Notes under the pieces: generated by a model
Told to the model about the DNA's origin: nothing
The model's input: only the letters and a program-made list of their open reading frames with translations
Databases searched by the model: none
NCBI RefSeq assembly: GCF_006345805.1
Contig: NC_042999.1
Coordinates: forward strand, 67,084,001 to 67,148,000
Source: Octopus sinensis
Lineage: Eukaryota
Direction of reading: 5' to 3'
Length of the DNA: 64,000 bases
Shown: piece after piece, positions 2,090 to 56,711 of the stretch
Layout: each line of letters opens with the position of its first letter
How positions within the stretch are numbered: the first letter of the stretch is position 1
Program-made: the position numbers and the translations under genes

Positions 2090-2320
2090 GGCGGCGAGCT
2101 GGCAGAATCGTCAGCAAGCCGGGCGAAATGCTTAGCTGTATTTCGTCTGCCGTTACGTTCTGAGTTCAATTTTCGCCGAGGTCGACTTTGCCTTTCATTC
2201 TTTCGGGGTCGATAAATTAAGTACCAGTTACGCACTGGGGTCGATATAATCGACTTAATCCATCTGTCTGTCCTTGTTTGTCTCCTCTGTGTTTAGCCCC
2301 TTGTGGGTAGTAAAGAAATA
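2090..2320 (+). mobile_element. SINE family A, long (Tx1-like) tail, nested in an older SINE
   Basis: Head ggcgagctggcagaatc, B-box-like gagttcaa(a/t)tt, tail gccccttgtgggtagtaaagaaata; TSD ggtatttagttataa (2075-2089 / 2321-2335). Confidence 0.85.
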
Positions 2321-2409
2321 GGTATTTAGTTATAATACTTTATGTTCTGAGCTCAAAATTTCACCGGAGACAACTTTGCATTCGTTCTTTTGGTGTCTTT
2401 CAAATCAAG

Positions 2410-2965: not shown

Positions 2966-3400
2966 GTGATGGTGGTGACAGAAATGACGATCAGGGGTTC
3001 TCAACCATTTTTTTTTATCAGGGGTTCTCAATTATTTTATTTGGGTGAACCCCCATAGCCATTCGATGTTTAGAAACTAGATTTATAGATACTTTTTTCA
3101 AAATTCCTCTTTTATTTTTTACATTGAACTATGTAAAATGTTAGAGAAGGAAACCTAGCTGTTTCTTGCAATACATTCCAATCTAAAGCTAAATATTTTC
3201 AGGGGGCCCCCAAAAAACTATCGTGGATCCATATCTTATATGGACCCTCAGAGGTCATATGGACTCCGGTTGATGATGACGACGACGATGATGAAATACT
3301 GGAATCATTTTAATATTCCTATAAAGCATCCTAAAGGCGGCAAGTCGGCAGAATTCTTAGCACGTTGAACGAAATGCTTAGCAGTATTCTTTTCGGCTCT

Positions 3401-3587
3401 TAGCGGTATTCGTCTGCCGTTACGTTCTGAGTTCAAATTCCGCCGAGGTCGACTTTGCCTTTCATTCTTTCGGGGTTGATAAATTAAGTACCAGTTACGC
3501 ACTGGGGTCGATGAAATCGACTTAATCCCTTTGTCTGTCCTTGTCTGTCCCCTCTATGTTTAGCCCCTTGTGGGCAATAAAGAAATA
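3401..3587 (+). mobile_element. SINE family A long tail, 5' truncated, nested in an older SINE
   Basis: Imperfect 18-nt TSD (3383-3400 / 3588-3605, 14/18). Confidence 0.8.
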
Positions 3588-17005: not shown

Positions 17006-18554
17006 TTATTATTATTATTATTATTATTATTCTTGTAAAAGCAGCAAGCAGGCAAAATCATAAGCATGCCAGACAAAATGCTTTGTTGTATTTCTTCCAG
17101 TTTTATATTCTGAGTTCAAATCCCACCAAGGTCGGCTTTGCTTTTCATCATTTCAGAGTCAATAGAATAAGTACCAGTTGAGTACTGGGGTTGATGTAAT
17201 CGACTTACCCACTTCCTTGAGGTTGCTGGCCTTGTGCCAAATTCTGAAGTCATTATTGATGCTCTCATAACAAGCAGTGAGCAGGCAGAATGGTTACAAC
17301 ACTGGACAAAGTGCATCATAGTATTTCTTCTGACTTTACATTCTGAGTTCAGATTCTGCCACTGTCAACTTTGCCTTTCATCTTTCTGGGGTCAATAAAA
17401 TAAGTACCAGTTGAATACTGGGGTTGATGTAATTGACTCTCCCCCAATTGCCGGGCCTTGTGCCAATAGTAGAAAGAATTATTAGTGTTGTCATAGACTG
17501 TGAGTTGGCAGAATGATTAGTGCATCAGAAAAAAATGCCTTATGGTATTTCTTTTGCTGCCTTAATTAACCCTTTCATAACCAGCCCAGCTGAAACTTGC
17601 TCTGAGTACAAATGTCTTGTTTCCATAAGTTTTTAATTAAAATCTTCCACCAAACCTTAGTCACAATTTATGTTCCTAATATGAGCTTAATGATAACTAA
17701 ATTATTTTACTAAAGTAATTGAAAGAAACGCAGAGCATCTCAAAATAAATACATTAACAAAAAGGTTAAATACTGAATTCAAATCTTGTTGGGGCCAGTT
17801 TTGCCTTCCATCCCTCTGGGGTTTATAAAACAAAGTACCAATCTAATACTGTGGAGGCACATGGCTTAATGGTTAGGGTGTTGGGCTTGAGATCATAAAA
17901 TTGTAGTTTCGATTCCTGGACCTGGTGACACGTGTTCTTGAGCAAAACACTTCATTTCACGTTGCTCCAGTCCACTCAGCTGGCAAAATTGAGTAATCCT
18001 GTGATGGATCAGCATTCCATCCAGGGACAAATATATACACCAGAGAAACTAGGAAACCAGCCCTATGCTCCTTACAGAGTAATGTGGACTTATCAACCTC
18101 CAATCTAATAATACTGGTCCTCCCCACTCCCCTCAAATTTGCTAGCTTTGTGTCTGTCTTTAATCTTTAACTTTGTTTTAACCATTTGACTGTGGCCATG
18201 CTGGGGCACTGCCTCAGTTTTAGTAAAATGAATCAACCCAGGACTACCATTTTTTAAGCTTGGTACTAATTCTGTTGGTCTCTTTTGCCAAAATGATGTG
18301 TGGTGGTGGTGGAGGTGACAAACAGACACATACACACACACACACTCATAGATATGTACATATACATGTATATCAAGGGCTTTTCCAGTTTCCATCTACC
18401 AAATCTACTAACAAGGCTTTGGTCGGCCTGAGGCTATAGTAGAAGACACTTGCCCAAGGTGCCACACAGTTAGACTGAACCATGTGATTGGGAAGCAAGC
18501 TTCTTATCACCCAGCCATGCCTGTGCCTATAAATCAGAAACAATTATTAATATT

Positions 18555-18782
18555 AGGCGAGCTGGTAGAAACGTTAGCACGTTGGCAAAATGCTTAGCGG
18601 TATTTCATCTGCTGCTACGTTCTGAGTTCAAATTCCGCTGAGGTTGACTTAGCCTTTCATCTTTTTGGGGTCGTTTAAATAAGTACTAGTTACACACTTG
18701 GGTCGATGTAATCAACTTAATCCGTTTGTCTCTCCTTGTTTGTCCCCTCTATGTTTAGCCACTTGTGGGCAATAAAGAAATA
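18555..18782 (+). mobile_element. SINE family A long tail
   Basis: TSD ag(a/t)aacaattattaatatt (18536-18554 / 18783-18801). Confidence 0.85.
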
Positions 18783-21237: not shown

Positions 21238-23726
21238 CATCATCACCGTTGTTTAATGTCCATTTCCATGCATGCATGGCCAAGTAGAAAATCTACCCAA
21301 GGCTACTGTGTCTGTTTTGGCAGGGATTTTACAGCTGGATGCCCTTCCTAATACCAACCACTCCGCAGAGTGGACTCAGTGCTTTTTATGTGGCACTAGC
21401 ACAGGCAAAATTAGTTTTGGCAAGATTTTTACAGCTGGATGCCCTTCCAGATACCAACCATGTTACAGTATTGATTGGATGCTTTTATCTTGGCACCAGC
21501 ACTGGCAGGGTAACCAAGTAATTCACAAGACAGGGAATTATTGGAGGGGCAGGGCATTTGTGTCAGAGGGTCAAAGTTTAGATTGTGATAAAGAAACAGA
21601 AGCAGATGTATTGCTGCAACAGAGGGGGCATTAGAAGAGGAGATCCAATATCAAATGATGAAAGGTTAGAGTTTAACAGAGAAATAGAGAGGCAGAAATA
21701 GATGTCTTGCTCTAGAGAAGGTACATGATTACCCAGAGAGAGAGAGAGTATTTCTTTATTCACCATAAGGTTGAGAAAAAGAGTGGACAATATGAGAACA
21801 GACAAAACAAACATTGGGGTCAGGGTATCGAATGAGACAAAACGTATGAATAAACAAACAAAATATATACAATTAAATGAGAATGAGTGATTAACAAAAA
21901 ATGAAGCGGAGGACGCGGTTGACCCCACAAACCACATACTCACACTGAAGACTTTGCTCTCTCATTTAAACAGGTTCTTTCACTCGCAACATACTTGATA
22001 TATACTTCCATCTTTTACGAAACACACTTTGCAGAGAGGTATGGTGATACTTGGTTACCTAGTCAGAGGAAAAACAAGAAGAGAGAGAGAGAGAGAGAGT
22101 AAACAAAGTGAAAGAGAGTGAATAGGAAACAGCAAAACTGTTAGAGAGAGAGCAAAAGAGAGATGGTGTAGTGCTAGGGTTTACTCACAAGTAACAAGAA
22201 TATGAACGTAAAACCTGGTTAGAAAAATAGGGGGTGGGTATGGGTGTTAGGGATTTGGGGAGCAGTGATACAGTGAGCATGGTTTGAGGGCATAATGTAT
22301 GAAGAGGAAATATGAGGAAGAGAAAGGTGCAATTAGAAGAGGAGGAGTTGTAGTTTGATTTCTTAGGGTATGCATACATACATACATACAAATAGTTGTC
22401 CTACCTCTCTTGTAAAGGTAACAGCTCTGTTCTTTTGATACCCTTAAAGCCAGGAACTTTTCAGTACCCCCTTATGTATGTGTACACATGTGTTTGTGTG
22501 TTTGTCTCCTTGGATTGATATTATGATAGTTGTAAACGAGTGTCATTGTTATACAAGTGGTGTCCTTCGTTTTCGACCTAGCACTGAAACATGTCCAGGC
22601 AAGTTCATTTGGCTATGGGAAAAAAAAGCTTCCTCAAGAATTTCCTTCTGACACATGCAAGCATGGAAAATTAGACATTAAACCAGTGATAATGTTGATG
22701 AAAAATCAATTTTTGTTTTGCAAAAATAGACATTCCTCTCTATGGAAACAGTTTCTTTAAGAATATTTAGTTTTTTAATTGAAAAAAAAAACAAGAAAGA
22801 ATCTCATTCTTTTATTCTACCTTTGAAAAAAGAAATGCGCCCTCTATGCAAAATTCCAGCACAGAAGAACTAGAGCTTTCAACTGAGATGTTGGATGGAT
22901 GGATGGATACATACATACACACACATGTATATACATGTATGCATGCATACATAAACATTCTCTCACACTATTTTATATATGATAACATTTTTTTAATTAC
23001 TATATATTTATAGATATAAAATGTATATGTATATATATATATATATCACAAACATATATGTGTGTGCGTGTATGTATGCACATATATATATATATTTATG
23101 TGTATGTTTGTCAGTATATGTGTAGAAACCATATCCATATGTTTAATAAATATATGGCTTTTAGTAACCTGGAATTCAGTTCGATCCCCATTTCAAGTTT
23201 TTCAAGGTCCCTGTGGTTTAATCATGGCTACTATTTTCACAGTGAAATCAGTGTATGTTTATTAAACATATGGATATGACTCTATATACATATTTGCTCA
23301 TGACCCATGTTGTTCTAGTGCTCTACAGCTGTAGAAGCCATGTAAAAGAGTGGTGCTGTTAAGCAAGGGGCAAGTTAGTCACAAATTTAACTAGGAATTT
23401 AACATGCATGTAGGTGTCCAGCAGGGTTGATTCTCAGCCCCTTTCTGTTTATTTATAGTTCTAGAGAATGTAACGGATGGGATGACGTCTGGCTGTCCAT
23501 GGAAACTTATGTATGTTAGTAACCTAGTTCAGTAAGAGAATTAGAGGAAAATTTCCAACTTGAATGCAATCTTTTTTGAATAAGTCCAAGATCTTTGGTA
23601 ACTAGCATCAAAGCCAGACAGTTGTTGTGCTGATGAGGGCTGTTGAGCAGTGTGGTTCAGAAGTTGCTTACTAACCATGTGCTTGTGAGTTCAGCCCTAC
23701 TGGGCAATATCTTTTACAACAGTACC

Positions 23727-23947
23727 TATTTCTTTACTACCCACAAGGGGCTAAACAGAGAGGACAAACAAACGGATTAAGTCAATTATATCGACCCCAG
23801 TGCGTAACTGGTACTTATTTTATTGACCCCGAAAGGATGAAAGGCAAAGTCGACCACGGCGGAATTTGAACTCAGAACGTAGCGGCAGACGAAATACCGC
23901 TAAGCATTCTGTTCGGCATGCTAATGTTTCTGCCAGCTCGCCGCCTT
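23727..23947 (-). mobile_element. SINE family A long tail
   Basis: TSD aacagtacc (23718-23726 / 23948-23956). Confidence 0.85.
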
Positions 23948-35652: not shown

Positions 35653-37270
35653 ACATCACTCATTTGCATTTTGTTCTTGTAATGTTCCCCTTCTGTCAGT
35701 TTTGTAACTTAATAAAGGAAGAATTTTTTTTTTAACTGAATTGTTCAGGTATGAGGCCATAAATAAATGCCTTGCTCTATTTTCCTGTCTATTTATATTC
35801 AACTCCATATTTCATAATTTGTTAAAAGGGTCCAAGGACCACATTGTTCTCCTGTGTCTGCTTTGGCCTGGTTTTCCAGAGCTGGATGCCTTTCCTATTG
35901 CCATTCACTTTACAGCATGTACTGGATACTCTTTTTTATGCCACCAGCATTTCTGAAGTTGCCATGCTGCTTGCAAGACTGTGAACCCTGAGGGGTCAGC
36001 TTTACATTAGGAGATTGAGTTGGGGTAAAAGTATGAAAGGAGATGCCAGGACAAAATAGGACAGACATTTTGCCGTAGAGGAACAACGTGACTACTCACA
36101 TTTTAACCCTTTCGTTACCATATTTATTTTGAGATGCACTGCGCTTCATTCAATTAATTCTAAATATAACAAAGAATTTAATAAAAGAACTTAGTTATCA
36201 TTAAGCTAGTGTTGGGAACATAAATTGTGACTAAGGTTTGGTGGAAGATTTTAATTCAATACTTATGAAAACAAGACATTTATACTACAGAGCCAGAGGC
36301 GGTTTTGGCCAGAAGGTGGGAGTGATTAGGTGCCATTGGAAAGAGATAAAAACTGTGGCAGAAAAAAAAAAAAAATCAATAAACATGTTAGTGAATGTGT
36401 TTGATGTTAGGAGTTGAGTTCAAGCTTTGCTGTAGCTGTTCTGTCGTCTCCCTTTCTCAGTCATCCTCCTGGATGCCTTAAAAATTAAAAATAAATGAAT
36501 GAATGAAAATCAAGGACTCCTTCATTCCTCTTAATTGTAGTACGCTTAGTCACAGGAAAGTCTCCTTTACACCTTCTTATCCATGTTAAGCATGAAGCAG
36601 AAAAGGGATGTAAAGAATAAATGGATGAGTAAATAAATGATTGGGTAACAGATCAAATGTACTTTATTCACGGTCCTTTGAGTTCTGGCTACGCTCGAAA
36701 GGTTTTTCTGTTGCCAAGTTGAACATAAGCTTCGGATTATCTTGAAGTAATCAAGCAAGGCAACTAGAACAAGCTTTCAGAAAAGTTGGCCATGTAGCTT
36801 AGAGTACATTTCAATTTAATGATTGGGATTCAGCAATTCCATCAGGCAGAACCGAAAGGAATGGAATTACATGTGTGTGCATGTATGTGTACCTCTGTGT
36901 TTGTGTGTGTGTGTGTGTCTGAAAGGAAAAGTGTTGATCTAATTTCTTTACCACACGGTCTCACAGTTAAAAAATCTGAGTGTGTGTTAATGTGTGCCTG
37001 TGCTAATGTGTGTGTTAACATCTGTATGTGTGTTGATGTATGTATGTGTGTGTGTGTGTGTGTGTTATAGTGTGGGCTGAGTGTAGTTGGGTGCATGTGT
37101 GCAATCAAGTATATGATGGCAAATATTTTTGTATCATCTTGAGTGATTAAAAAAAAAATACCTGCATATCTTTAATTCTACAGGTATGACATTTTTTTTT
37201 AGGATACTTATAACTACTATTACTATTGCTACTACTAATCCTTCTCACTAGCACCACCATTATCATTACC

Positions 37271-37503
37271 TATTTCTTTACTACCCACAAGGGGCTAAAC
37301 ACAGAGAGGACAAACAAGGACAGACAAACGGATTAAGTTGATAATATCGACCGCAGTGCGTAACTGGTACTTATTTAATCGACCCCGAAAGGATGAAAGG
37401 CAAAGTCAACCTCGGCGGAATTTGAACTCAGAACATAGCGGCAGAGAAAATACTGCTAAGCATTTCGCCTGGCGTGCTAACGTTTCTGCCAGCTTGTCGC
37501 CTT
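37271..37503 (-). mobile_element. SINE family A long tail
   Basis: TSD ending cattatcattacc on both sides (left ends 37270, right ends 37521). Confidence 0.85.
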
Positions 37504-40950: not shown

Positions 40951-43237
40951 CACACATACATACATGCACACATACACACACACATACATACATGTACATA
41001 TGTATGTATATGTGGATACATGTGTGTATATAGGTGAATGTGTTTGTTTTGTTTTTGTTTTTTTTTGTGCTTATTCATTTATAATCAATGGCTTTCTGAC
41101 AGTAATGTTTGTTTGCAGCTTACCATGGAAGCCTATCTGGGCTTCTTAACATGTCTTGACATGGTGCATGATTTTATAACCAAAATGCCCGTTCATGCTA
41201 CACCATTTGTTTCTATTTCTCTGCTTAAAATATGTCTGGGCTATTTGTTGTTCAGTAGACTGGGGGGGGGGGGTTATTATCTGCCTTAGGAACAAGTGGG
41301 GTTAGTGACAGTAAGGGTATCCAGTCATAAAAGAAAAACATAATAATAAAACTGTCCCAAATACTTACATCTGATCTATGCAAGCATAGAAAAGTAGATA
41401 TTAAAATAATGATGATGATATAAACCCATTGTTATCAAGATTGTCCCACTTACTGCTTACCTCACATGCCCTCAACCACCTTTACACACCTTTATCACCC
41501 TCACATACTGCCACATTACTTTGTTGCTCTAACACACCCTCATTGGTACCCTCAAACTCTCTCTCTCTCTCTCTCTCTCACATGCCCTCACACCACCTTC
41601 ATATCTCTTCACACCCTGCCTCATATACCCCCTCATATTTTCATTTCACCTGTTTCTCTGACCTGTTGCTAAGCAACAGGAGCAACTAGGTTTGTGGCCA
41701 TTCTGAATTGCCCTGCCTCTTTGTTGTTTAGTCCTTGATCAATCCCTGATAGAGATGTATGGTCAGAGGTGTCCCAGTCATGACCATGTCAGTTTATTTC
41801 AGTCCTAGTATGTATAGGGCTACTTTATCCAATGTGTCACCAGGACTTGATTTGAAAAAAAATTTGGCTGCTATTTCTACACACATACACATGCATACAT
41901 ACATATTTATGTATATATTGGCGAGTATGTTTGTATTTTTTTGTGCTTACTGATTTATAATCAATGGCTTTCTGACAGTAATGTTTGTTTGCAGCTTACC
42001 ATGGAAGCTTATCTGGGCTTCTTAACATGTCTTGACATGGTGTGTGATCTTTATAACCCAAAAGCCCATTCATACTGTGCCATTTATTTCCAGTTTTCTA
42101 TTTAAAACTTGTTTGTTGTTCAATAGACTGGTGGATTATTATCTGCCTTGGGAGCAAATGGGGTTAGTGACAGGAAGGGTATCCAGCCACAAAAAAAAAT
42201 AAAAAATAAATAAAACTCTGTCCCAAGTGTCTGTGCGGTAAGTAGCTTGCTTACCAACCACATGGTTCCGAGTTCAGTCCCACTGCGTGGCACCTTGGGC
42301 AAGTGTCTTCTACTATAGCCTCAGGCCAACCAAAGCCTTGTGAGTGGATTTGGTAAACGGAAACTGAATTTTACCGGTGGATTATTATCTGCTCCCAAGG
42401 CGGATAATAATCTACCAGTGAAATTATTTGAGGTAAAATTTGGCTGCTGTTTCTAGCATGTCAAACAGTCGTATAGAGGCACCATTCTAGCTGTGGCCAT
42501 CTTGACTGACTTTATTTTTTATCTTTTGAACAGTTAGGTGTGATTTGATGCAGATTTAGCTGCTATTTTTGTCGCATTAAGTGGCTACATAGAAGCTCTC
42601 TTATGTGTATAATTGATGTGTGTTATCAATATGAAACTCTGCAAAGGTAATTGAAAAGCAGAAAAATATTCCTTTCCCTACCCCCCCCTCTAGTTTTCCC
42701 CACTTCAGTCTATTTTCTTAATGTTTTGTTGTTTTTTCTTTTTGTCTTCAATCTGCTGATCAAACACATTCACTTCCTCATGTACAACCTTTAACTTTAT
42801 GATAGTGTAACATTATACTTGTAAAGCTTGGTTTTTAATATTCTTCACCTCCCCTATTTCGGAGACAATCTGATCTCCTTACGGTGTATTGATAACAGAT
42901 AATGGATAACAAGCGGGGAGGGGTGGTGGAATCTACTTCATGCACATGTTCCACATCCTCTTCATTGGTGAACTTGAGCCGTTTGGAAAGATCAGATTAC
43001 AGCTGTTTGTGGTCAGTGTCCACTGTGATATGTAAATGGATATTATGCTGGTTTCAACAATGAGGAAGGCTCCAGTTATTTGATTAAAGGAACCACCAAT
43101 TGCTTTCTAGTGTATGTTGCTAGGCACAGCTGTGGAGTTAAGGAGCTCACTTTACAATCATGTCGTTTCAGATTCAATTACACCATGTAGCACCTCGGAC
43201 AAGTGTCTTTTTCTATAGCCCTGGGCTGACCAATACC

Positions 43238-43470
43238 TATTTCTTTACTACCCACCAGGGGCTAAACACAGAGAGGAAAAACAAAGACAGACAAACGGAT
43301 TAAGTCGATTATATCGACCCCAGTTTGTAACTGGTACTTATTTAATTGACCCTGAAAGGATGAAAGGCAAAGTCAACCTTGGTGGAATTTGAACTAAGAA
43401 CGCAGCGGCAGACGAACTACTGCTAGGCATTTCGCCCGGCGTGCTAACATTTCTGCCCGCTTGCCACCTT
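43238..43470 (-). mobile_element. SINE family A long tail, nested in a family D SINE
   Basis: TSD gggctgaccaat(a/g)cc (43223-43237 / 43471-43485). Confidence 0.85.
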
Positions 43471-46019: not shown

Positions 46020-46639
46020 CTCCAGTCTATGAGAAGACCTCTGGATGATTGCTCAACCTACAAGAATTAGCAACCTAATTCCTCTCAATCCACACCTTAG
46101 CATTAAAAAAGATGTCAGATAATATATTTAATTCTGAATACATTACATTATCTGAAAATAAGATGGGATGGTTGTGATTGAAATGCTTTGATCATATATA
46201 ATAGGTTTGCTTGATCAGAGCTAGCCTGGGGTTAAACAACGGCACACATCCTCATTCTACTTAGTGGGAGATTTTTTTCTCAGATGCTTTACATTATGAA
46301 ACTGGCCCTTGCTTAGTCCAAGGTTAGTTCTAAAAGAGCTGACCTGTAATCCAGCCTTAATCACACTGGTTATTAACCTAATGTACGTAGAACTGTATTA
46401 ACCAATGCTCTTCCGTCCCTACATATCTGGAGTTTGTAATGTGTAATTTGAGGGAGATTCGACTGCTATTTCTAGTTGAGTAACCATACAGAGGTTTTAG
46501 TTCACTGGTTTGGAGATAGTAGGTGTAGGAATTTTCTTATTGACTGTTTGCTAGTCACAGATTTGGCTTGTCTGGGAAGATCCAGCTGTAGTATAGGATG
46601 GTATTGTACCTAAGTAGCATTTGCTATACTCAGGGTTAT

Positions 46640-46721
46640 ATATGTACACACACACACACACAAGTTATATGTGTGTACATATACATGAATATTTGTGTGT
46701 GTATGTATATATATGTACATG

Positions 46722-46762
<41 letters not shown>

Positions 46763-46831
46763 GTATGTATATATGTGTATATATATGTATGTATATATGT
46801 GTATATATATATGTGTATATATGTGTATATA

Positions 46832-46870
<39 letters not shown>

Positions 46871-47085
46871 ATATGTGTATGTATATATGTGTATGTATAT
46901 ATGTGTATATATATGTGTATGTATATATGTGTATATATATATGTGTGTGTATATATATATATACATATATACATATATGTGTGTGTGTGTATATATATAT
47001 ATATGTACATATATACATATGTGAGTGTGTATATATATAGATATATATAATATATACACACACTATGTGTGTGTGTGTGTGTGTA
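46640..47085. repeat. Mixed (TA)n/(TG)n/(CA)n microsatellite
   Basis: Direct reading; source of many I/Y/C/V-rich pseudo-ORFs. Confidence 0.9.
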
Positions 47086-47254
47086 AACAGGGACAATGTA
47101 ACAATGCACTCTTTGAACAACTTCCTGAGACTTATCAAAAATCTATGAACTCCAAACCTTTTGACCAAATTCTATTCTGGAATTCACAGCAATAAGGTCA
47201 TTGTCTTGTCACTCAAGTTGATAGAAGTAAGTGAGAGGAAGGAAGGTATTTTAC

Positions 47255-48195: not shown

Positions 48196-49099
48196 TGATT
48201 TTCATCTTTTTTTTGTTTTTGTGCTTATTTGTTAAAATAATAAAAATTCAGCAAACTACCAACATTGAATAAGACTAAACCTAAACCCTGAGTGTGTGTG
48301 TGTGTTTGTGATCGAGTTTTTATTATTAGAGTTCCTGTTATAAAGAAGAAGGCTGGTTTCCAAGCCCCACCACTGGAATCTCAATATCAATAATAGTGAA
48401 GAATTACATGTTGAATTTTAGAAGAATCTTGTGTACTTTTACCGTTCTTCTGCTTACCGATTGTAATTCTAAAGTGTGTGTAAGCTGGTTACTTTCTTTG
48501 AGAGCTCCAGTTGATCAAGATTACCACTTAGATATTTAATAACCTAATCACATACATCAATAATTAGGGACACAAGTATTGATTTATAATTTGAGTAGAG
48601 AAGCCGTGTTTTAGCCCTTTCGGTACTGCCTGAGACTGCTCTTGGTTCTATGATACAAACTTCTTGTTTTAAAGTTATCCCCACTAATTTCAGGCCTTGT
48701 GCCTTTTGTAGAAAGAATTATTATTATTATTATTAATATTATTATTATTAATATTATTAATATTATTATTATTATTAATATTATTATTATTATTAATATT
48801 ATTGTTGTTGTTGTTGTTATTATTATCATCATTATTGTCATTATTCTGCCTAGTTCAGTTTTGCCTTTCATCTATTCGTAGTCGATAAAATAATACCAGT
48901 TGAGCACCGGGGTCGATGTAATTGACTTATCTCCTCCTCCCAAAATTGCTGGCCTTGTGCCAAATTTTGAAATTAAAATCTTCCAGCTTAATTTCCTGTT
49001 AATTTATTTTCCAAGCATCAGCTTTATATAACAACAGTTTTTCTTATCTCCCAGGAGAGTTATGTCACAAATAAGCACACATTGGTTCTCTATCACTTT

Positions 49100-49279
49100 T
49101 CCACTAACCCCCTTTTTTTTTTAACCTTTGTATGTTATGCACGTGTCTCTTCTTTTCCAGTGTACACCATGTATACTTTATTTTAATTTTTTTAAATAAA
49201 TTTATTATATGTAAACCCCCACATGTCTGTCTCTGTATTATCCTTCTCATCCTTCACCCTTGTAGCAAATAAATGAAAT
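49100..49279 (+). mobile_element. 3'UTR-only fragment of a related Tx1-like LINE
   Basis: Pyrimidine/T-rich tract ending cacccttgtagcaaataaatgaaat, the same terminal motif as the LINE at 55199-55225, followed by (ATT)n. Confidence 0.5.
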
Positions 49280-49300
49280 CATTCTTATTATTTTTATTTA

Positions 49301-49337
<37 letters not shown>

Positions 49338-49517
49338 TAAGATGGCAGAATTGTTAGCATGACAGGTGTTAGCATGAGCGGTATTTCGTCTGTCTTCACA
49401 GTCTGAGTTCAAGTTCTGCTGGGGTTGATAAATTAAGTATCAGTGAAACACTGGGGTCAATTACATCGACTGGTTCCCTCCTCACTAATTTCAGGCCTTG
49501 TGCCTTTTGTAGAAAGA

Positions 49518-49569
<52 letters not shown>

Positions 49570-49689
49570 TGCCTAGTTCAGTTTTGCCTTTCATCTATTC
49601 GTAGTCAATAAAATAATACCAGTTGAGCACTGGGGTTGATGTAATTGACTTATCCCCTCCCCCCCCCAAATTGGTGGCCTTGTGCCAAA

Positions 49690-51509
49690 GTTTTCCGAAC
49701 CGCAGAGCACGAGCTCGGTTCAAAAGGAGAATGCAAGCCAGGACGTCGCGTTCGACGTAATTCTCGATTTTCCCCCTCTGCCTTCACCTAATGCTTTGGT
49801 ACGGAAGGAGGAGGGAGAAAAAACAATTACAAAAATCATCACAAACATTGACACGGAGATAAAAGAAAAAACCTCCAACAATTTTGCTTCTGCTGCGAAG
49901 CAAATTTCGGAGGAAGTTAAGATAACTCTAGAAGATGTGAAAAGAGCGAAGGAATTGTTAAGGAAGGATGGCAATGGTATCTTCCTCAATACTCCACAAG
50001 AGGTGATTGAAAGCACCAACAAGCAAACAATAATTTACAAAGTTTTCGACAGAAAACTAAAAAGAATAACAAATGCCACACCCCAACAGTTGGAGATAGC
50101 TCTAAAGCCCATTTGGGCCCAAAAGAGCTACGTGACCAAGGGGAAGCGTTTTGGAACCGTGGAGGTTCGCTTCCCAACAGAGGAGCTTGCAAGGGCGAAC
50201 GCCATTTCGCCCTTGCAAACTGAGAATTTGTTACTAGTTCCGACCCACCTCGGGCGAAGAGTAGCAAAAATAAAAATCGACCTCGTCCCCCCTGAGCTAA
50301 ATATGTCATGGCTGGTGGCAGCTGTCCTCTATGATATAGAGGACACTACCACCATTCTAGATGTCAGGAGAGTGAGGGCGAAAAACTGGTTGGGGATGGG
50401 AGTGCTGCTTCTTGCGCAAATTCAGCAAGAGAATATAAGTAAAATCCCTGATTTCGTAAGTTTGCCGGACGGCACCAGGCTAAACGTTGCTGTGGAGGGG
50501 CGAAAGCCAAAATTTTTTCTCTGCAGCAGCGAAAGCCACTTAAAGAGGGACTGTCCCATTCACAAAAGAGGATGGAGGCTTTCAGCAAGAGGCAGCAGCA
50601 CACACAACACAACAACAACAACAACACAACACAACAACAACAACAACAACAACAGCAACAACAACAGAAACAACAAAAACAGCAAGAAACACCAAAGGCT
50701 GCCACACCACCAACACCATCACCAACACCAGCACCAAGACGAACAACACCACCTCCAACAACAACAACCACCACCAAACCAACACCGACAACCACCAGCA
50801 AACCAACACCGACACCAGTACCTCGAAGGTCGACAGCAGCGACATCAACAGTAACAGGAGCAGCGGCACCACCGATACCGGCGGAACCAAAAACTTTTCG
50901 TCCTGCTACTGAAGCAGACCCCTCAACCATTCCTTTGCCGGATGAAGAGATCTCGGATTGTGCGAGCTCTGATTCCAACAAAGGAGAATGGAACATAGTA
51001 CCCCCAAAAAAGAAAAGGAGGAAAAAACAAAAAGATTTACAGGGGAAGCACGAACAAACAGTACTTCCCAACATCAACAACAACATCAACAACACACACT
51101 CACAACAACAAACAACAACACAACAACACTTTCGACACCACTACTGCCACTACCACAGACACAAACAAACACAGACACAATTACAGACACGATTACAGCA
51201 GTGAATACAAGAAACCAGGAACTGGTTGAGTATTTGAAAAACAAAACAAGCACAAACATTACAGATTTCATAATACCTACACACAACACACCACCAGCAC
51301 ACATTCTCACAATAAAAATAAACAAAACAGTTTACAACGAAATAAAACAAATATTCCCTAACGATGTGGGATCGTTAGGGAAAAGTTTCTCTCAGAAACT
51401 TTACAAAATATTATTGAAGCACCCGTGCAAAAGCACAAGGGAGCCACCCCCACCACCAACAACAGTAAGTAGAGCCTTTTTTCTCCTTTTTTTTCCCCCT
51501 AACTTTTGA
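49690..51509 (+). pseudogene. LINE ORF1 (RRM-like region + degenerate CCHC knuckle + Q/T/P low complexity), split over three frames, no start codon
   Basis: Frames 49682-50854, 50572-51204 and 50988-51509 join into one protein if one A is restored near 50564-50567 and one near 51022-51033; knuckle KPK(F)FLCSSESHLKRDCP; basic W..VPPKKKRRKK motif; stop TGA at 51507-51509. Confidence 0.75.
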
Positions 51510-51512
51510 AAC

Positions 51513-54500
51513 ATGGCAAATCTTAGAATCGGTTGCTTGAATGTGAGAGGCCTCGGGTCACCTTGGAAACAGGGTCACCTGTTAAACGACCTGAGGTTTC
51601 ATGATGTGGATGTAGCAGCCATCAGTGAAACCAGGCTCTCCGACCCGCAGGAACTCGCAGCCCTTTTCGGCGGATATGAGATATTTCTATCTCCATGTCG
51701 GCCGGGAGCGGGCGGTGGTGGTACTGCGGTGTTGTTTCGGAAGGGCCTGGACCTGAAAATAAGGACAGTCTTCTTGGATCCGGAAGGTAAGTTGGTGGTC
51801 CTCGACATGGACGGTAGTGACGGCGGTGCTTTCAGGCTGCTGGCTGCCTACGCTCCGACAGGAGCAGGGCAGTCGGATTATTTCAAACGTCTGGAAGTTT
51901 TCCTGGGAACGTCACGCACTCTAGTACTAGTTGGGGATTGGAACACTGTCTTAGACGAACGTTTCGATCGGGTGGGCAGGGGAGCGTCTGATAGGAAAGG
52001 GGGAGGGTGCAAGAGCCTCGCCAACCTACTCGGCCGCTTTCAGCTGTCCGACAGGTTTCGACTAGACAACCCGAATGTGCCAATGTGGACTTGGACAAAC
52101 CGCATCGGGTCGTCTAGATCGTACTTAGATAGAGTGTTTTGTAGGCCAGCGGATAAGGACAGCGTAGGGTGTCCACAATTCCACCTAGTCGAATATACGG
52201 ACCACAAATTAGTGATCTGTACGGTCGACTTAGATAGGCTACATAGACAGGGACCCGGCTACTGGAAGCTGAACGCGTCGTTAACGGCGTGCAAAGCTTA
52301 CAGAGACCGGATTAGTTTACTAGTTAAGCGGGCGCTCACGGGGGCAATCATCAACAACAACTGGTGGTTTGCCCTCAAGAGAGCAATTAGAGTAGAGTCG
52401 ATTAGGTATAGTAAGACTCTAGCTATTGAACGTAGGAAGAGAGAGCGGGATTTAGTTAAGAAACTAGACGAGGCTCTTGACACTGGCATCGCGACCGACG
52501 TGTTGGCGGCAAGGTTGGCCCTCGACCAACACTTCGACGCCAAACACGAAGGCTGCGTTGTCAGAGCTAAGGCACGTTCGCTAAGCGGGGAGGGGACTAG
52601 AGCCGCTCGATGGGCCCGCGTGGCGGAGGCGAAGCGAGGCAACAGAGCAACCATTCGGTCTTTGGTGGACCAGAACGGGCGCGAGGTTACCCAACCGAAG
52701 CAGATGTGTATGGTGCTTCAGCGGCACTTTGCTCAACTGTTTGGGATGAGCGGTGGAACGGACACCAACGGTACAGACTTCGGTGTGTACCTGGACGGAC
52801 TGCCGCAACTCTCGGACAGCGAGGCAGAGTGCTGCGAAGGACCGATATCTGCCTGGGAAGTACAGGAAGCGATGAAGAGTTGCACGAGAGGTAGATCGTC
52901 GGGTTTGGATGGTCTGCCCTACGAGCTTTACTTTTCAATGCCAGACTTGTTTGCGGACCTGTTGGCAAACGTCTACTGCAACTGGCAGCAAAACGGGAGA
53001 ATTCCTGCTTTTGTCTGTCGAGGGGTGGTGGCTTTGCTAAAGAAGGACCCAAACAAGGGGGACGTTATAGGGAATTTCCGGCCCATCACTCTGCTCAATG
53101 CAGAGTTGAAGATTTTGGCCAAGGTGCTAGCCAAGAGATTGGCGCTCGTCGTGGACAAGCTGGTCGGCGGGACGCAGACATGCGCCGTGCCGACCAGGTC
53201 GATACACGACAAACTCCATCTCATGCGCTACATCATAGAGAGGGTGGGTAACGACGCTGGCGCGGGTGGGGCTTTGATCAACTTGGATCAGAGTAAAGCC
53301 TTCGATAGGGTCGACCATCGGTACCTGGCAGCTGTCCTCAAGGCAGCCGGCTTCGGTCCAGTCTTCCGCGGGTGGATCGCTGCTTTATACAGCAACATCT
53401 GCTCGGTGATACGGGTGAACGGTCACCTTTCGGAACCGTTCGACATCTCGCGTTCGGTCCGCCAAGGATGCCCTCTCTCCTCCCTCTTGTACATTTTGAC
53501 TCTCGAGCCATTACTGCGCAAGTTGGAGGCTTTGAGGGGCATCCCGCGCGATCTAGGAGGCGGAAACAGCGTGTCTGCTTATGCCGACGACGTCACCGTG
53601 GTGGTGTCGAGCCACAGGCACATTGGCCTGATTGACGAGACGCTAAACCAGTACGAAGCGGTGACAGGGGCAAAGATTAACGCGGAAAAGTCTGTGGGCT
53701 TGCAACTGGGCACCTGGAGAAGCAAGCCCATGCCGTCCAACAGCGTCGTAGGGCGCTGGACAGACGGACCCGTTAAACTGCTCGGGGTCTGGTTCGGTCC
53801 GGACCTCCAGGTGGATAAGAACTGGGAAGAGGTGACGAGCAGGGTGGCACGTCTCACCCAGAAATGGGCCGAGAGGAAGCTGTCCCTGAAAGGTCGAGCG
53901 GAGGTGGCGAATGCGTACATCGCATCCGTCATCTATTACCGCTTGACCGTCGTCCCTTGTCCCGACCGCTGGTTGGCCAAGCTGGTACGCCTGCTCTTCG
54001 ACTTTTTGTGGAAGGGTCAGGTGCCACTGGTCAGGCGATCCATCTGCTGTCAACGACCGCTGAACGGAGGCCTTGGAATGCCGTGGTTGCTGTTGCGCAG
54101 ACATGCGCTCAGGCTGCGGCATCTCAAGCGCTTCCTAGACGGTGAACATGTGTGGTCGTCTTTTGTCAGACGCGATTTTCCGCAGCTCGTCTCTTTGACG
54201 GAGCTGCAGACCTGGATCAAACGTAGACCGAGAAAGGGCGCTTGGCACCTCGAGTGCCGTCAAGCCCTCTCCGCCCTCCGCCAGGCGGGCAATGCGGTCG
54301 GTTACAGCTCCACTCTAGCGTTCTATAGAGGGGTAGTGGAGGAAAAATGCGACGACGTTCTCGGGGAAACTCTAGGTGTTGAAGACGACGAACTGAGTGG
54401 TCTGTTCGGGAGGACTTTCGGGCCGGGGCCGATGGATAATTTCCAGAGGTCTCTCGCCTGGCAGTGCTACCGAGGGGCTCTGCCTGTTCGAGATAAACTC

Positions 54501-54947
54501 TACCGGCACGGAAGTGCCGTCAGCCGGGCCTGCCCGAGGTGTTGCCAGGACGACGAAACCGTTCTGCACGCACTCGTCCAGTGCCCGAGTATTGCTGAAA
54601 TATGGGTTTATGTCGAACAGCTACTGTCATGTATAGGACGGATCCGACTATCGGCCGAATCCATAGTGAAGATTGCCCCGCCGACCTCCTTTAACAAGGA
54701 GGGCGAGGCCGTTTTCTTGTGCCTTGTGGCTGTGGCGAAAGAAGTTGTGTGGTGGACTCGTTTGAAAGGGCTAAAGTCAGACACTTTCCTCTTTGGTCAA
54801 GGCCTCATCAACTTTTTCAAGTTTCACTTGAAAAGGAAGATGAGGTTAGAGAGGAAAGTGCTGTCCGATAGCAAGTTTTATGAAAGGTGGGTGAATTGTG
54901 CGAGACTGGCCTGTATAAATGGACCAGTTCTCAGGTTTCGCCTGTGA
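51513..54947 (+). CDS. LINE ORF2: APE endonuclease + reverse transcriptase + C-terminal zinc finger (1144 aa)
   Basis: APE motifs LNVRGL, ISETRL, GDWN, YLDRVF, TDH; RT motifs GLDGLP, FRPITLLN, LDQSKAFDRVDH, VRQGCPLS, YADD, LLGVWFG; CPRC..ETVLHALVQC finger; no internal stops. Confidence 0.96.
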   Translation: MANLRIGCLNVRGLGSPWKQGHLLNDLRFHDVDVAAISETRLSDPQELAALFGGYEIFLSPCRPGAGGGGTAVLFRKGLDLKIRTVFLDPEGKLVVLDMDGSDGGAFRLLAAYAPTGAGQSDYFKRLEVFLGTSRTLVLVGDWNTVLDERFDRVGRGASDRKGGGCKSLANLLGRFQLSDRFRLDNPNVPMWTWTNRIGSSRSYLDRVFCRPADKDSVGCPQFHLVEYTDHKLVICTVDLDRLHRQGPGYWKLNASLTACKAYRDRISLLVKRALTGAIINNNWWFALKRAIRVESIRYSKTLAIERRKRERDLVKKLDEALDTGIATDVLAARLALDQHFDAKHEGCVVRAKARSLSGEGTRAARWARVAEAKRGNRATIRSLVDQNGREVTQPKQMCMVLQRHFAQLFGMSGGTDTNGTDFGVYLDGLPQLSDSEAECCEGPISAWEVQEAMKSCTRGRSSGLDGLPYELYFSMPDLFADLLANVYCNWQQNGRIPAFVCRGVVALLKKDPNKGDVIGNFRPITLLNAELKILAKVLAKRLALVVDKLVGGTQTCAVPTRSIHDKLHLMRYIIERVGNDAGAGGALINLDQSKAFDRVDHRYLAAVLKAAGFGPVFRGWIAALYSNICSVIRVNGHLSEPFDISRSVRQGCPLSSLLYILTLEPLLRKLEALRGIPRDLGGGNSVSAYADDVTVVVSSHRHIGLIDETLNQYEAVTGAKINAEKSVGLQLGTWRSKPMPSNSVVGRWTDGPVKLLGVWFGPDLQVDKNWEEVTSRVARLTQKWAERKLSLKGRAEVANAYIASVIYYRLTVVPCPDRWLAKLVRLLFDFLWKGQVPLVRRSICCQRPLNGGLGMPWLLLRRHALRLRHLKRFLDGEHVWSSFVRRDFPQLVSLTELQTWIKRRPRKGAWHLECRQALSALRQAGNAVGYSSTLAFYRGVVEEKCDDVLGETLGVEDDELSGLFGRTFGPGPMDNFQRSLAWQCYRGALPVRDKLYRHGSAVSRACPRCCQDDETVLHALVQCPSIAEIWVYVEQLLSCIGRIRLSAESIVKIAPPTSFNKEGEAVFLCLVAVAKEVVWWTRLKGLKSDTFLFGQGLINFFKFHLKRKMRLERKVLSDSKFYERWVNCARLACINGPVLRFRL

Positions 54948-55744
54948 TTTCAAAGAAAAAGGTAATGTAAAAGGAGAAGAAAGGGGACTCTCTACACCCC
55001 CTTTTTTTGACCAGGCTCCCGTTGGCTTTTGTAGGGTTTTTTCCACCAGGAACCTTTCGAGGCGTCTCCCCCTTTTGGGAGATTTTCATTGTTTTAATAA
55101 TCATTGTTTTAAAGTTTTTTACACGGATTTTTTAACAAACGGACAAAACCCTTTGTAACCTTTCGTCCTGTCTTGTCCCTTTATGTAATCATGCGTGTCA
55201 GCCCTTGTGGCCAATAAAAAAGAATTGATTATTATTATTATTATTGAGGTGGCAACCTGGCAGAATCATTACCACACCAGGCAAAATGCTCAGCAGTATT
55301 TCATCTGTCTTCACGTTCTGAGTTCAAATTCCGCCAGGTTTGACTTTGCCTTTCATCTTTTCAGGGTCGATAGATTAAGTACCAGAAAAGTACTGGGGTC
55401 AATGTGATCAACTATCCCCACAAATTTCAGGCCTTGTGCCTTTAGTGGGAAAAATTATTATTATTATAACCGGCTTCCATGCCAGTGGCACATAAAAGGC
55501 ACCATTCGAGTGTGATCGTTACCAGCGTCGCCTTACTGGCACTTGTGCCCGTGCTAGTAGGGTGCCAAGAGCACCATCCGAATGTGATCGTTGCCAGAGC
55601 AGCCAACTGGCTTCCGTGCCAGTGGCACGTAAAAGGGCACCATTCGAGCGTGATCGTTACCAATGTCACCTTACTGGCACCTGTGCCGGTGGCATGTGTA
55701 AAAAGATTCGAGCGAGGTCATTGCCAGTACCACCTGACTGACCC

Positions 55745-55965
55745 CCATTGATCTTGTTGTCACCGGGGCATGCTATGTTGCTTATCATACATGTTCCTTC
55801 TGGTCGGGTGATCGCACTGGATCACTGCATCCCACAGGATTTTTCCATTCTCATTTTCCGTTACTCCTTCTGGAGTTTGCTCAGACCACGTTTTTGCTCT
55901 TTGTAGGCCGTGATTTCCACAGAGGTCCTGATGGATCATTCTTGCCACATTGTTATAGCATGACC
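55745..55965 (-). mobile_element. R4/Dong-clade LINE fragment (restriction-like endonuclease region)
   Basis: NNVARMIHQDLCGNHGLQRAKTWSEQTPEGVTENENGKILWDAVIQCDH then, after a deletion/frameshift, EGTCMISNIACPGDNKI. Confidence 0.75.
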
Positions 55966-56711
55966 AAGTAACTGATTAACTAATTGCTTGATTAATCAAA
56001 CTACCAGTTAGGTTCATCAAAATCCTTTCATTGCTATTCACAACAACCTCATCAATGACTTGACCCCACTCAACTCCAGGTCTGTTTGCAGTACATTGAT
56101 TGACCGAATGGTTAATCATTAGTTAATTGGTTAAATAATTAACTTGTGAATCAGTTACATTGAACCCCCCCCCCCTAGTTTATTGACCCTGAAAGCATGA
56201 AAGGCAAAGTTGACTTAGGCAGAATTTGAATGCAGAACTTAAGAACGGATGAACTGCTGCTAACTGCACCAAGTGACACTCACACATGCACACACACACA
56301 CTATTTGCTTCTACTTTTTGTCACTAAAAATCAATAATATATTTTATCCTCTTATATAATTTAGCTCCCCAGGAAAGTCCTTGGTTATATAAAATATATT
56401 TTTTGGGGGATGATATTAACATAATCTCACTGCAGATTTCAAAAGATAAAACATAAAAACAAAAAAGAAAGACTCCTAAAACATCTAAAAGACTAAAAAC
56501 TGGCACAGTTCCTGTTTTTTATTCAATAACTTTTGCTTAAAAGCTATTGAGCGAAGGACTGTAGCACAAGTTTAAAAAGGTCAATGTCACATTTATCGCT
56601 TAAAATATAACACCCACACACATCAGAATCTGATTCATCTAATTCTAATAATTCTTCCAACCATTCTTTTTTATTTACCTTTTATGTATCAAAAATCAAA
56701 ATCAAATTCGA

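What the first reader, a model, noticed from the sequence alone, without database searches (positions are those of the whole stretch)
55165..55226. A SINE subfamily shares its 3' tail with the Tx1-clade LINE: candidate SINE-LINE partner pair
Seen: the LINE ends gtcctgtcttgtccctttatgt..cagcccttgtggccaataaaaaagaat, while long-tailed family A SINEs end gtccttgtctgtcccctctatgt.tagccccttgtgggcaataaagaaata (3537-3587); a second LINE 3' fragment ends cacccttgtagcaaataaatgaaat (49255-49279). Known: shared 3' tails mark SINEs mobilised by stringent LINEs (typically L2, CR1, RTE), whereas mammalian L1 recognises poly(A) instead. Inference: this Tx1-type ORF2 recognises a specific RNA tail and drives a young SINE subfamily. 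I do not know of this pair being described.
Basis: partly seen in the sequence, partly recalled or inferred. Interest (0 to 1): 0.85.

Follow-up and report, generated by a model that had tools for sequence, protein, structure and literature searches.

The report
Octopus SINEs share an L1-type LINE tail
The last ~50-60 bases of an L1/Tx1-type jumping gene family in octopods are also the last bases of abundant short parasitic repeats (SINEs), the usual sign that the short repeats are copied by that family's enzyme; this is a real pair of a well-known kind, but the copy in this window is not the best-matching partner.

Summary
The quoted strings are at the stated coordinates, and the LINE's last 87 nt align colinearly with a SINE-A 3' end (score 31; shuffles 15.3±2.6; 0/2000).

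The window's LINE is the weakest witness. Related LINE 3' ends from elsewhere match the SINE-A tail much better:
- Octopus sinensis, L007: 37/42 identical, z≈15, blastn E 2.6e-9.
- Argonauta hians, L006: 43/53 identical, z≈11.

A profile built only from three external LINE tails recovers all six SINE-A tails in the window, the window LINE tail and the second LINE fragment. Among LINEs whose ORF2 C-termini are 48-78% identical, the last ~30 UTR columns are 71% identical, against 18-55% for the rest of the UTR. In Argonauta, at least two SINE families carry the same tail.

Best reading: a stringent-type LINE group mobilises octopod SINEs through a shared 3' module. The specifics need correction:
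- The window copy is 5'-truncated, has a ~10-nt tail insertion and ends in (ATT)n, so a sister lineage without (ATT)n is the likelier SINE-A driver.
- SINE-A copies are 5-11% diverged, and the tail is older than the Octopus-Argonauta split.
- L1-superfamily membership is shown; Tx1-clade membership could not be tested.

This is a new member of a known kind, of moderate interest.

The parts
49694..55245 (+). 5'-truncated LINE of the L1 superfamily: ORF1 remnant, spacer, ORF2, 3' UTR and (ATT)6 tail
   Evidence: The 5' junction is where homology between the duplicated upstream SINE pieces stops (48968/49693). The ORF1 frame has no ATG near its start and aligns to Argonauta ORF1 only from about codon 92. 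GC is 0.47-0.56 against about 0.37 in the surroundings.
49694..50854 (+). ORF1 remnant with no start codon and a degenerate CCHC knuckle (FFLCSSESHLKRDC)
   Evidence: The Argonauta homologue has an intact CX2CX4HX4C knuckle (Pfam zf-CCHC E 0.06, below threshold).
51513..54947 (+). Intact ORF2 of 1144 aa: APE endonuclease, reverse transcriptase with YADD, C-terminal zf-RVT
   Evidence: Pfam Exo_endo_phos 1e-16, RVT_1 1e-28, zf-RVT 1e-8. The best solved structure is human L1 ORF2p, 1.8e-49. It aligns full-length to 1145-aa relatives.
54948..55226 (+). LINE 3' UTR
   Evidence: Alignment with the 3' UTRs of L005, L006 and L007.
55165..55226 (+). Conserved 3' tail module of the LINE (the finding), here carrying a ~10-nt lineage-specific insertion at about 55186-55199
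   Evidence: The last ~30 alignment columns have 0.71 mean pairwise identity, against 0.18-0.55 upstream. nhmmer E is 2.4e-6 against a profile of external LINE tails. The insertion is unique in the window.
55228..55245 (+). (ATT)6 terminal repeat of the LINE
   Evidence: The same repeat follows the tail in L005, L006 and fragment X.
2094..2321 (+). SINE-A copy 1; TSD GGTATTTAGTTATAA
   Evidence: Tail nhmmer E 1.3e-5.
3334..3587 (+).
   Evidence: Tail nhmmer E 4.6e-8.
18556..18782 (+). SINE-A copy 3; TSD AACAATTATTAATATT
   Evidence: Tail nhmmer E 6e-7.
23727..23947 (-). SINE-A copy 4; TSD GGTACTGTT
37271..37503 (-). SINE-A copy 5; TSD GGTAATGATAATG
43238..43470 (-). SINE-A copy 6; TSD GGYATTGGTCAGCCCARGG
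48985..49335 (+). Fragment X: old, 5'-truncated 3' UTR of the same LINE family plus its (ATT)n tail; the 5' limit is approximate
   Evidence: Blastn to the L005, L006 and window LINE 3' ends, E 3e-15, 2e-10 and 3e-6. Tail nhmmer E 0.005.
21749..22078 (-). Fragment W3: tail-bearing ~330-nt element flanked by (CT)n on both sides; possibly a third LINE 3' end, not confirmed
   Evidence: Sequence. Tail versus SINE-A z=6.9; nhmmer E 0.009. No blastn match to L007.

Best explanation
The window comes from an octopod genome. It holds one 5'-truncated copy of an L1-superfamily LINE with an ORF1 remnant, an intact ORF2 (APE, RT, zinc-binding C-terminus), a 279-nt 3' UTR and an (ATT)n end.

The last ~50-60 nt of the UTR is a conserved RNA module. 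Its consensus in relatives is ..GTCCCCTCTATGTTTnGGCCCTTGTGGCTAATAAAGAAAT. It can fold into an interrupted hairpin with a 3-4 bp GC stem closing a CUUGU loop.

The same module ends the SINE-A elements of the window and at least two SINE families in Argonauta.

Proposed mechanism (inferred, by analogy with UnaL2/UnaSINE1 and other stringent LINEs): the ORF2 protein of this LINE group binds the tail module in its own RNA and starts target-primed reverse transcription there. Pol III transcripts of SINEs that acquired the module are accepted in trans and inserted with 9-19 bp target-site duplications and no poly(A).

The group has at least two tail types, one followed by (ATT)n (window copy, L005, L006, X) and one without (L007). 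SINE-A has no (ATT)n and is closest to the second type. Its driver is therefore most likely a sister lineage of the copy in this window, not this copy.
For: Shown:
- LINE domain content and intact ORF2.
- Tail similarity above chance for the window LINE.
- Much stronger similarity for relatives whose ORF2 C-termini are 48-78% identical. Blastn gives E 2.6e-9 (L007) and 1e-7 (L006). Shuffle z is 14.9, 11.4 and 7.3 for L007, L006 and L005.
- The similarity ends at the 3' terminus of both partners and does not include the SINE body.
- The tail is as conserved as the best coding stretch, while the rest of the 3' UTR is not.
- A profile built only from LINE tails of other loci finds 6 of 6 SINE-A tails in the window.
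- SINE-A copies have clear TSDs and no A-tail.
- Argonauta CORE-type and simple SINEs carry the same tail next to a full-length LINE of the family.
- The match length and identity (38-53 nt, 81-89%) lie within the range used to call partnerships in bivalves (35-61 bp, 72-95%; PMC11481361).
- The hairpin pairs in 88% of cells, against 40-51% when the partner columns are slid.

Inferred: RNA recognition by ORF2p, trans-mobilisation, and which lineage is the driver.
Against: - There is no functional test.
- Covariation for the hairpin is weak: one pair with double changes, and it depends on the alignment. Folding energies are no better than shuffles.
- The window LINE's own tail matches the younger SINE-A consensus no better than chance (z=1.2).
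- Tails of the other active octopus LINE clades (RTE, CR1, Dong-R4; PMC13282606) could not be obtained, so a better match elsewhere is not excluded.
- Ages were estimated from only six SINE copies and no LINE population.
- The tail contains AATAAA, so part of its conservation in LINEs could reflect polyadenylation rather than RT binding.
Confidence: 0.72

Rival explanations
1. The window's own LINE lineage, with the (ATT)n tail, is the driver of SINE-A.
For: Its ORF2 is intact. The tail is similar to the older SINE-A copy A2, z=5.9.
Against: It has a ~10-nt tail insertion that no SINE carries. It ends in (ATT)n, which SINE-A lacks. It scores z=1.2 against the younger SINE-A consensus, whereas L007 scores z=14.7. 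This copy lacks the ORF1 start.
Confidence: 0.12
2. The true autonomous partner is a LINE of another clade (RTE, CR1, Dong-R4) that carries an even closer tail. The L1-type LINEs merely share or borrowed the module.
For: Those clades are the most active in Octopus vulgaris (PMC13282606). SINE tails are known to be exchanged between partners (PMC11481361). None of their tails could be examined here.
Against: Only one coding LINE is present in the window. The module sits at the same place in at least four L1-type lineages of two octopod families and is conserved there. No other element type with the tail was seen in 64 kb plus 25 kb of related loci.
Confidence: 0.1
3. The similarity is chance, or is driven by composition and by a poly(A) signal (AATAAA) in a T/C-rich context. 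It has no bearing on mobilisation.
For: The window LINE match is weak and gapped and is missed by blastn. No covariation proof and no folding-energy signal exist.
Against: Shuffle z reaches 15, and blastn E is 2.6e-9 in a 42-kb database. There is a 15-nt identical block GTCCCCTCTATGTTT upstream of AATAAA. The LINE-only profile finds every SINE-A tail.
Confidence: 0.03
4. The other SINE types in the window (B and C, ending ..CAGGCCTTGTGCC..AGAAAGAATT(ATT)n) are the partners of the (ATT)n-type LINE lineage represented by the window copy.
For: They share the (ATT)n end and a GGC-CTTGT-GCC hairpin-like core. One copy, at 17400-17479, matches the window and L005 LINE tails with z of about 6-7.
Against: The other B and C copies are not above shuffles (z between -1 and 2.3). 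nhmmer E is 0.74.
Confidence: 0.3

Closest known systems
UnaL2 / UnaSINE1 of eel (L2 clade), the experimentally proven stringent pair
   Same: The SINE and LINE share the last ~60 nt. There is a small conserved stem-loop, a short terminal repeat and no poly(A). The tail is needed for recognition in that system (cited in PMC3472496, PMC4176376).
   Different: The LINE clade differs (L2, against the L1 superfamily here). Here nothing is tested experimentally, and the hairpin is supported only by conservation.
L1-clade stringent pairs: maize LINE1-1_ZM with ZmSINE2/3, and Chlamydomonas L1-1_CR with SINEX-3_CR (Ohshima 2012, PMC3472496)
   Same: An L1-group LINE with a conserved ~45-80 nt 3' end is shared with SINEs. 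The tail is far more conserved than the rest of the element.
   Different: Those are in plants and algae and end in poly(A). Here the host is an animal (octopod) and the end is (ATT)n or nothing. [quoted passage not shown]
SINEU / Tx1-Mar of crocodilians (Kojima 2015, PMC4494074)
   Same: A Tx1-type LINE is proposed as the driver of a SINE family.
   Different: That partnership was inferred from shared insertion targets and shared snRNA-derived 5' heads, not from a shared 3' tail.
Octopus CORE-SINEs OR1/OR2 (Ohshima and Okada 1994; cited in PMC4824008, PMC4758252)
   Same: Octopod SINEs with box A/B-like heads and a central segment that resembles the CORE domain. Probably the same superfamily as SINE-A.
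   Different: I could not obtain the OR1/OR2 sequences, so identity with SINE-A is not tested. No LINE partner for them is mentioned in the papers I could read.
Bivalve HCD-SINE / LINE partnerships (Martelossi 2024, PMC11481361)
   Same: The same kind of evidence and the same range of tail homology (35-61 bp, 72-95%). Several SINE superfamilies share one LINE-derived tail.
   Different: The partner clades named there include Nimb and CR1-Zenon. Tx1 is not mentioned anywhere in that paper's main text.

Membership tests
Stringent-type SINE-LINE pair (shared 3' tail) | Homology confined to the 3' end of the SINE and the 3' end of the LINE 3' UTR | tested here: met
   The alignments end at both termini and exclude the SINE body and LINE coding sequence.
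Stringent-type SINE-LINE pair (shared 3' tail) | The tail is conserved among diverged LINE lineages more than the rest of the UTR | tested here: met
   0.71 against 0.18-0.55 mean pairwise identity.
Stringent-type SINE-LINE pair (shared 3' tail) | SINE copies are retroposed: TSDs present, no reliance on poly(A) | tested here: met
   At least five of six copies have 9-19 bp TSDs. The elements end ..GAAATA with no A-run.
Stringent-type SINE-LINE pair (shared 3' tail) | A conserved RNA stem-loop in the tail supported by compensatory changes | tested here: inconclusive
   88% of cells pair, against 40-51% when slid, but there is only one alignment-dependent double change. Fold z-scores are not significant.
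Stringent-type SINE-LINE pair (shared 3' tail) | Overlapping periods of activity of SINE and LINE | not testable with these tools
   Only six SINE copies (K2P 0.05-0.11) and single LINE copies are available. Genome-wide landscapes are needed.
Stringent-type SINE-LINE pair (shared 3' tail) | Tail-dependent trans-mobilisation by ORF2p | not testable with these tools
   This requires a retrotransposition assay.
L1 superfamily (L1/Tx1 group) LINE | APE endonuclease, RT and C-terminal Cys/His motif in ORF2, with a separate ORF1 | tested here: met
   Pfam hits. The best PDB hits are L1 ORF2p. The motif CX2CX8HX4C is present in the ORF2 translation. ORF1 has a CCHC knuckle in the Argonauta copy.
Tx1 clade | RT-domain phylogeny placing the element with Tx1L, Keno, Kibi or Koshi rather than L1 | not testable with these tools
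   No Tx1 reference sequence could be retrieved, and the names of relatives are uninformative. Indirect only: published annotation lists L1-Tx1 as the only L1-type group among active O. vulgaris LINEs (PMC13282606).
Tx1 clade | Sequence-specific insertion into repeats or microsatellites | tested here: inconclusive
   Copies lie next to (ATT)n and SINE tails, in a 31-bp satellite (L007) and between (CT)n (W3). There are too few copies, and the (ATT)n is the element's own tail.
tRNA-derived CORE-SINE (OR1/OR2-like) | tRNA-related head | tested here: not met
   ARAGORN and Rfam find no tRNA, even at E<=10 on one copy. Only box A/B-like motifs (TGGCAGAA.., GAGTTCAAATTCC) are visible by eye.
tRNA-derived CORE-SINE (OR1/OR2-like) | CORE central domain | not tested
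   The resemblance of ..TTTGCCTTTCATCCTTTCGGGGTCGATAAATTAAGTACCAG.. to the MIR CORE is from memory only. No reference sequence was available.

The most novel reading that the evidence does not exclude
An animal L1/Tx1-group LINE lineage, conserved across Octopoda, uses stringent recognition of a ~35-60 nt 3' module (CUUGU-loop hairpin plus AAUAAAGAAAU). It is the long-sought autonomous driver of the octopus-specific SINE expansion (SINEs are about 12% of the O. vulgaris genome). This would be the first animal L1-group SINE partner defined by a shared tail.
Probability: 0.35. Interest if true: 0.6.

Novelty: new member of a known kind. Interest (0 to 1): 0.45.

Why it matters
Octopus genomes are unusual among molluscs for a very large SINE load, and the papers I could read name no autonomous partner for these SINEs.

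Tying a major SINE family to a specific, still-coding L1-type LINE group would give that expansion a mechanism. It would also add an animal case to the very few L1-group LINEs known to need a specific 3' tail. That bears on the idea that stringent recognition is ancestral in the L1 group and was relaxed independently in mammals and plants.

It would also provide a compact RNA element and an intact ORF2 for a retrotransposition assay.

Tried and rejected
1. Blastn of the window LINE 3' UTR against the window at E<1e-3 gave only a self-hit. The similarity needed gapped local alignment and outside relatives.

2. An exact look-up of the window ORF2 found nothing on record. The full-length ORF2 word search gave few relatives and no useful names. 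The C-terminal query was what worked.

3. L001, L003, L004, L008 and L011 are cut before the tail or have a diverged one. L002 (39% identical, marine metagenome) shows no clear tail.

4. Scans of metagenome contigs and genome contigs with protein patterns and with the tail pattern gave only chance hits, L010 and L012.

5. Tx1-versus-L1 assignment by names of relatives failed. The relatives are unnamed or labelled 'RT domain-containing', and no supplementary sequences were held.

6. Rfam and ARAGORN did not detect a tRNA-like SINE head.

7. The idea that SINE-B and SINE-C tails also derive from this LINE tail is not supported statistically, except for one copy.

8. The idea that the SINE fragment abutting the LINE 5' end belongs to the LINE is set aside. 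The LINE is simply 5'-truncated, and the Argonauta copy has its own 5' UTR and ORF1 start.

9. W3 as a LINE 3' end is not confirmed by blastn.

Full report
**What is at the coordinates**

Positions 55165-55225 are the last 61 nt of the 3' UTR of a LINE. They are followed by TG(ATT)6 and then the head of another SINE.

The LINE runs from about 49694 to 55245 on the + strand.
- ORF2 (51513-54947, 1144 aa) is uninterrupted.
  - It carries Exo_endo_phos, RVT_1 and zf-RVT domains.
  - It has a YADD box and a CX2CX8HX4C motif.
  - Its best solved relative is human L1 ORF2p, E 1.8e-49.
- The ORF1 frame (to 50854) has no ATG near its start. It aligns to the Argonauta homologue only from about codon 92.
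- The first cysteine of its CCHC knuckle is lost.
- The copy is therefore 5'-truncated, with only ORF2 intact.
- The element is much more GC-rich (0.47-0.56) than its surroundings (about 0.37).
- It is the only coding LINE in the window.

**The SINE side**

Six copies of one SINE family (SINE-A, about 230 nt) are present: 2094-2321, 3334-3587, 18556-18782, 23727-23947(-), 37271-37503(-) and 43238-43470(-).
- At least five have clear 9-19 bp target-site duplications. None has a poly(A) tail. All end ..AAAGAAATA.
- They are 5-11% (K2P) from their local consensus.
- They fall into two subfamilies. A2 and A3 have CTCTATGT...GGGCAATAAAG and are more diverged. The other four have CTCTGTGT...GGGTAGTAAAG.
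- Rfam and ARAGORN do not recognise a tRNA in the head. Box A/B-like motifs are visible by eye.
- Published work describes octopus SINEs OR1/OR2 as CORE-SINEs (PMC4824008, PMC4758252). SINE-A looks like that kind, but I could not test it against reference sequences.

**Checking the observation**

- The LINE tail aligns colinearly to the A2 tail with score 31. Shuffles give 15.3±2.6, and none of 2000 reaches 31.
- The match is gapped and is missed by blastn.
- Against the consensus of the younger subfamily it is not significant (z=1.2).
- The core motif occurs 9 times in the window, against 0.42 expected.
- The 'second LINE fragment' (X, about 48985-49279 plus (ATT)n) is a diverged 3' UTR of the same LINE family. 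Blastn E-values are 3e-15, 2e-10 and 3e-6 to L005, L006 and the window LINE.

**Evidence from elsewhere**

The full-length ORF2 query found few relatives. The C-terminal 344 aa found thirteen, and their contigs supplied LINE 3' ends.

| Locus | Source | ORF2 C-terminal identity | 3' end |
|---|---|---|---|
| L005 | JGI sample | 77-78% | ..GTCCTTAATGTTTCCGGGCCCTTGTGGCCAATAAAAGAAATC(ATT)n |
| L006 | Argonauta hians; full-length LINE with ORF1 and ORF2 | 66-69% | ..GTCCCCTCTATGTTTTTGCCCTTGTGGCTAATAAAAGAAATA(ATT)4 |
| L007 | Octopus sinensis | 48-52% | ..GTCCCCCTCTATGTTTGGGCCCTTGTGGCTAATAAAGAAAT, no (ATT)n |

SINE-A ends ..GTCCCCTCTATGTTTAGCCCCTTGTGGGCAATAAAGAAATA.
- Blastn now links the SINE-A tail to the LINE tails directly: 89.5% over 38 nt (E 2.6e-9, L007) and 85.7% over 42 nt (E 1e-7, L006).
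- Shuffle z-scores are 14.9 (L007, 37/42), 11.4 (L006, 43/53), 7.3 (L005) and 5.9 (window LINE).
- In an alignment of four LINE 3' regions, the last ~30 columns are 71% identical on average. That equals the best coding stretch (74-75%). The rest of the UTR is 18-55%.
- An nhmmer profile built only from the L005, L006 and L007 tails finds the following in the window:
  - all six SINE-A tails (E 4.6e-8 to 1.6e-4);
  - the window LINE tail (2.4e-6);
  - X (0.005);
  - a fragment at 21751-21792(-) (0.009).
- In the 12.8-kb Argonauta locus it finds a dozen or more tail-bearing elements of at least two SINE types. One type has a CORE-like body homologous to SINE-A (72-74% identity). The other is a short simple type present as three tandem copies just upstream of the LINE.

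**What this means**

The tail is an integral, constrained part of the LINE family. It is shared with several SINE families in two octopod lineages. This meets the criteria the field uses for a specific SINE-LINE partnership (PMC11481361: 35-61 bp, 72-95% identity, at the SINE tail and within the LINE 3' UTR).

The most likely mechanism is stringent recognition of the tail RNA by ORF2p, followed by target-primed reverse transcription. SINE transcripts that carry the tail would be accepted in trans. That step is inferred, not shown.

A candidate structure is an interrupted hairpin, UCU-A-UGUU-UG-GGCC[CUUGU]GGCU-AAUA-A-AGA.
- It pairs in 88% of cells, against 40-51% when the partner columns are slid.
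- Covariation is weak, and folding energies are unremarkable.
- I therefore treat it as compatible, not proven.

1. The window copy is the poorest match.
   - It has a ~10-nt insertion (AATCATGCGTG..) inside the module that no SINE in the window carries.
   - It ends in (ATT)n, which SINE-A lacks.
   - The L007-type lineage is the better candidate driver.
2. The partnership is old, since it is shared with Argonauta. The SINE-A copies here are moderately diverged rather than very young.
3. 'Tx1-clade' is unverified.
   - I could show L1-superfamily membership only.
   - Names of the closest relatives were uninformative.
   - Indirect hints are that L1-Tx1 is the only L1-type group listed among recently active O. 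vulgaris LINEs (PMC13282606), and that copies sit in microsatellites or satellites.

**Comparison with what is known**

- Shared tails are the classical mark of stringent LINEs.
- In the L1 group they are rare. Ohshima (2012, PMC3472496) found three SINEs with L1 tails among 58 pairs, all in maize or Chlamydomonas. The 2013 review (PMC3747384) does not mention octopus.
- A Tx1-SINE link exists in crocodilians, but it rests on shared targets and shared heads (PMC4494074).
- I found no paper describing a LINE partner for octopus SINEs.
- Repbase and Dfam notes could not be checked.
- This is therefore a new member of a known kind. It is of moderate interest because of the clade and because octopus SINEs are so abundant.

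**Not resolved**

- Whether another LINE clade has a closer tail.
- The Tx1 label.
- Whether SINE-B and SINE-C, which end in (ATT)n, pair with the window's lineage. Only one copy supports this.
- Why two 89-98% identical copies of [SINE-B tail-(ATT)n-5'-truncated SINE-C] each sit immediately upstream of a LINE-family insertion.

Noticed in passing
window 48678-48968 and 49479-49693: Two 89-98% identical copies of a composite: SINE-B tail, (ATT)n, then a SINE-C that starts at the same 5'-truncated position. Each is followed within about 12 nt of the same point by a different LINE-family insertion (fragment X, and the 5.5-kb LINE). This could be a local duplication followed by two tail-targeted insertions, or template-switch chimeras. 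It is unexplained.
   Followed up: partly
window, TSDs of SINE-A copies (2079-2093/2322-2336; 23718-23726; 37258-37270; 43219-43237): Four of six SINE-A target-site duplications begin with GGTA, and two more begin with GGCA/GGTA and AGTA. This suggests a cleavage or priming preference at 5'-|GGTA(T/A)T. O. sinensis LINE L007 is followed by TGGATG.
   Followed up: partly
window 21749-22078 (-): A ~330-nt element ending ..CAACCTTATGGTGAATAAAGAAATA is flanked on both sides by (CT)n. It looks like an insertion into a (TC)n microsatellite, as described for the Tx1-clade Kibi elements. Its LINE origin is not confirmed by blastn.
   Followed up: partly
L006 880-1357 (Argonauta hians): Three head-to-tail copies (period about 157 nt) of a short SINE with the LINE tail lie directly upstream of the 5' end of the full-length LINE. 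In the window, several SINEs also abut one another (for example 17040-17485 and 3334-3760). Possibly these elements insert preferentially at existing tails.
   Followed up: no
window 50001-56000: The LINE is strongly GC-rich (ORF2 region 0.56) in a 0.31-0.42 GC background. The ORF1-ORF2 spacer is low-complexity (Q/N/T/H-rich in three frames).
   Followed up: no
window 55468-55745: Just downstream of the SINE that follows the LINE, a unit of about 120 nt (..GGCTTCCRTGCCAGTGGCACRTAAAAGGCACCATTCGAG..) appears to occur at least twice in tandem. It is a different, unidentified repeat, seen by eye only.
   Followed up: no
window 46598-47170: A long imperfect (TA/TG/CA)-type microsatellite block gives spurious ORFs in all frames (YIYIYI..).
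   Followed up: no
P0038 cluster (Patella caerulea): Eleven near-identical ORF2 relatives (30% identical to the window ORF2) have consecutive locus tags on one limpet chromosome. This indicates a tandem array of LINE copies, the pattern expected for a target-specific element in a tandem repeat.
   Followed up: no
P0010: A protein 67% identical to the window ORF2 C-terminus is deposited as a 'Herbaspirillum sp.' MAG protein. It is almost certainly cephalopod host DNA binned into a bacterial MAG.
   Followed up: no
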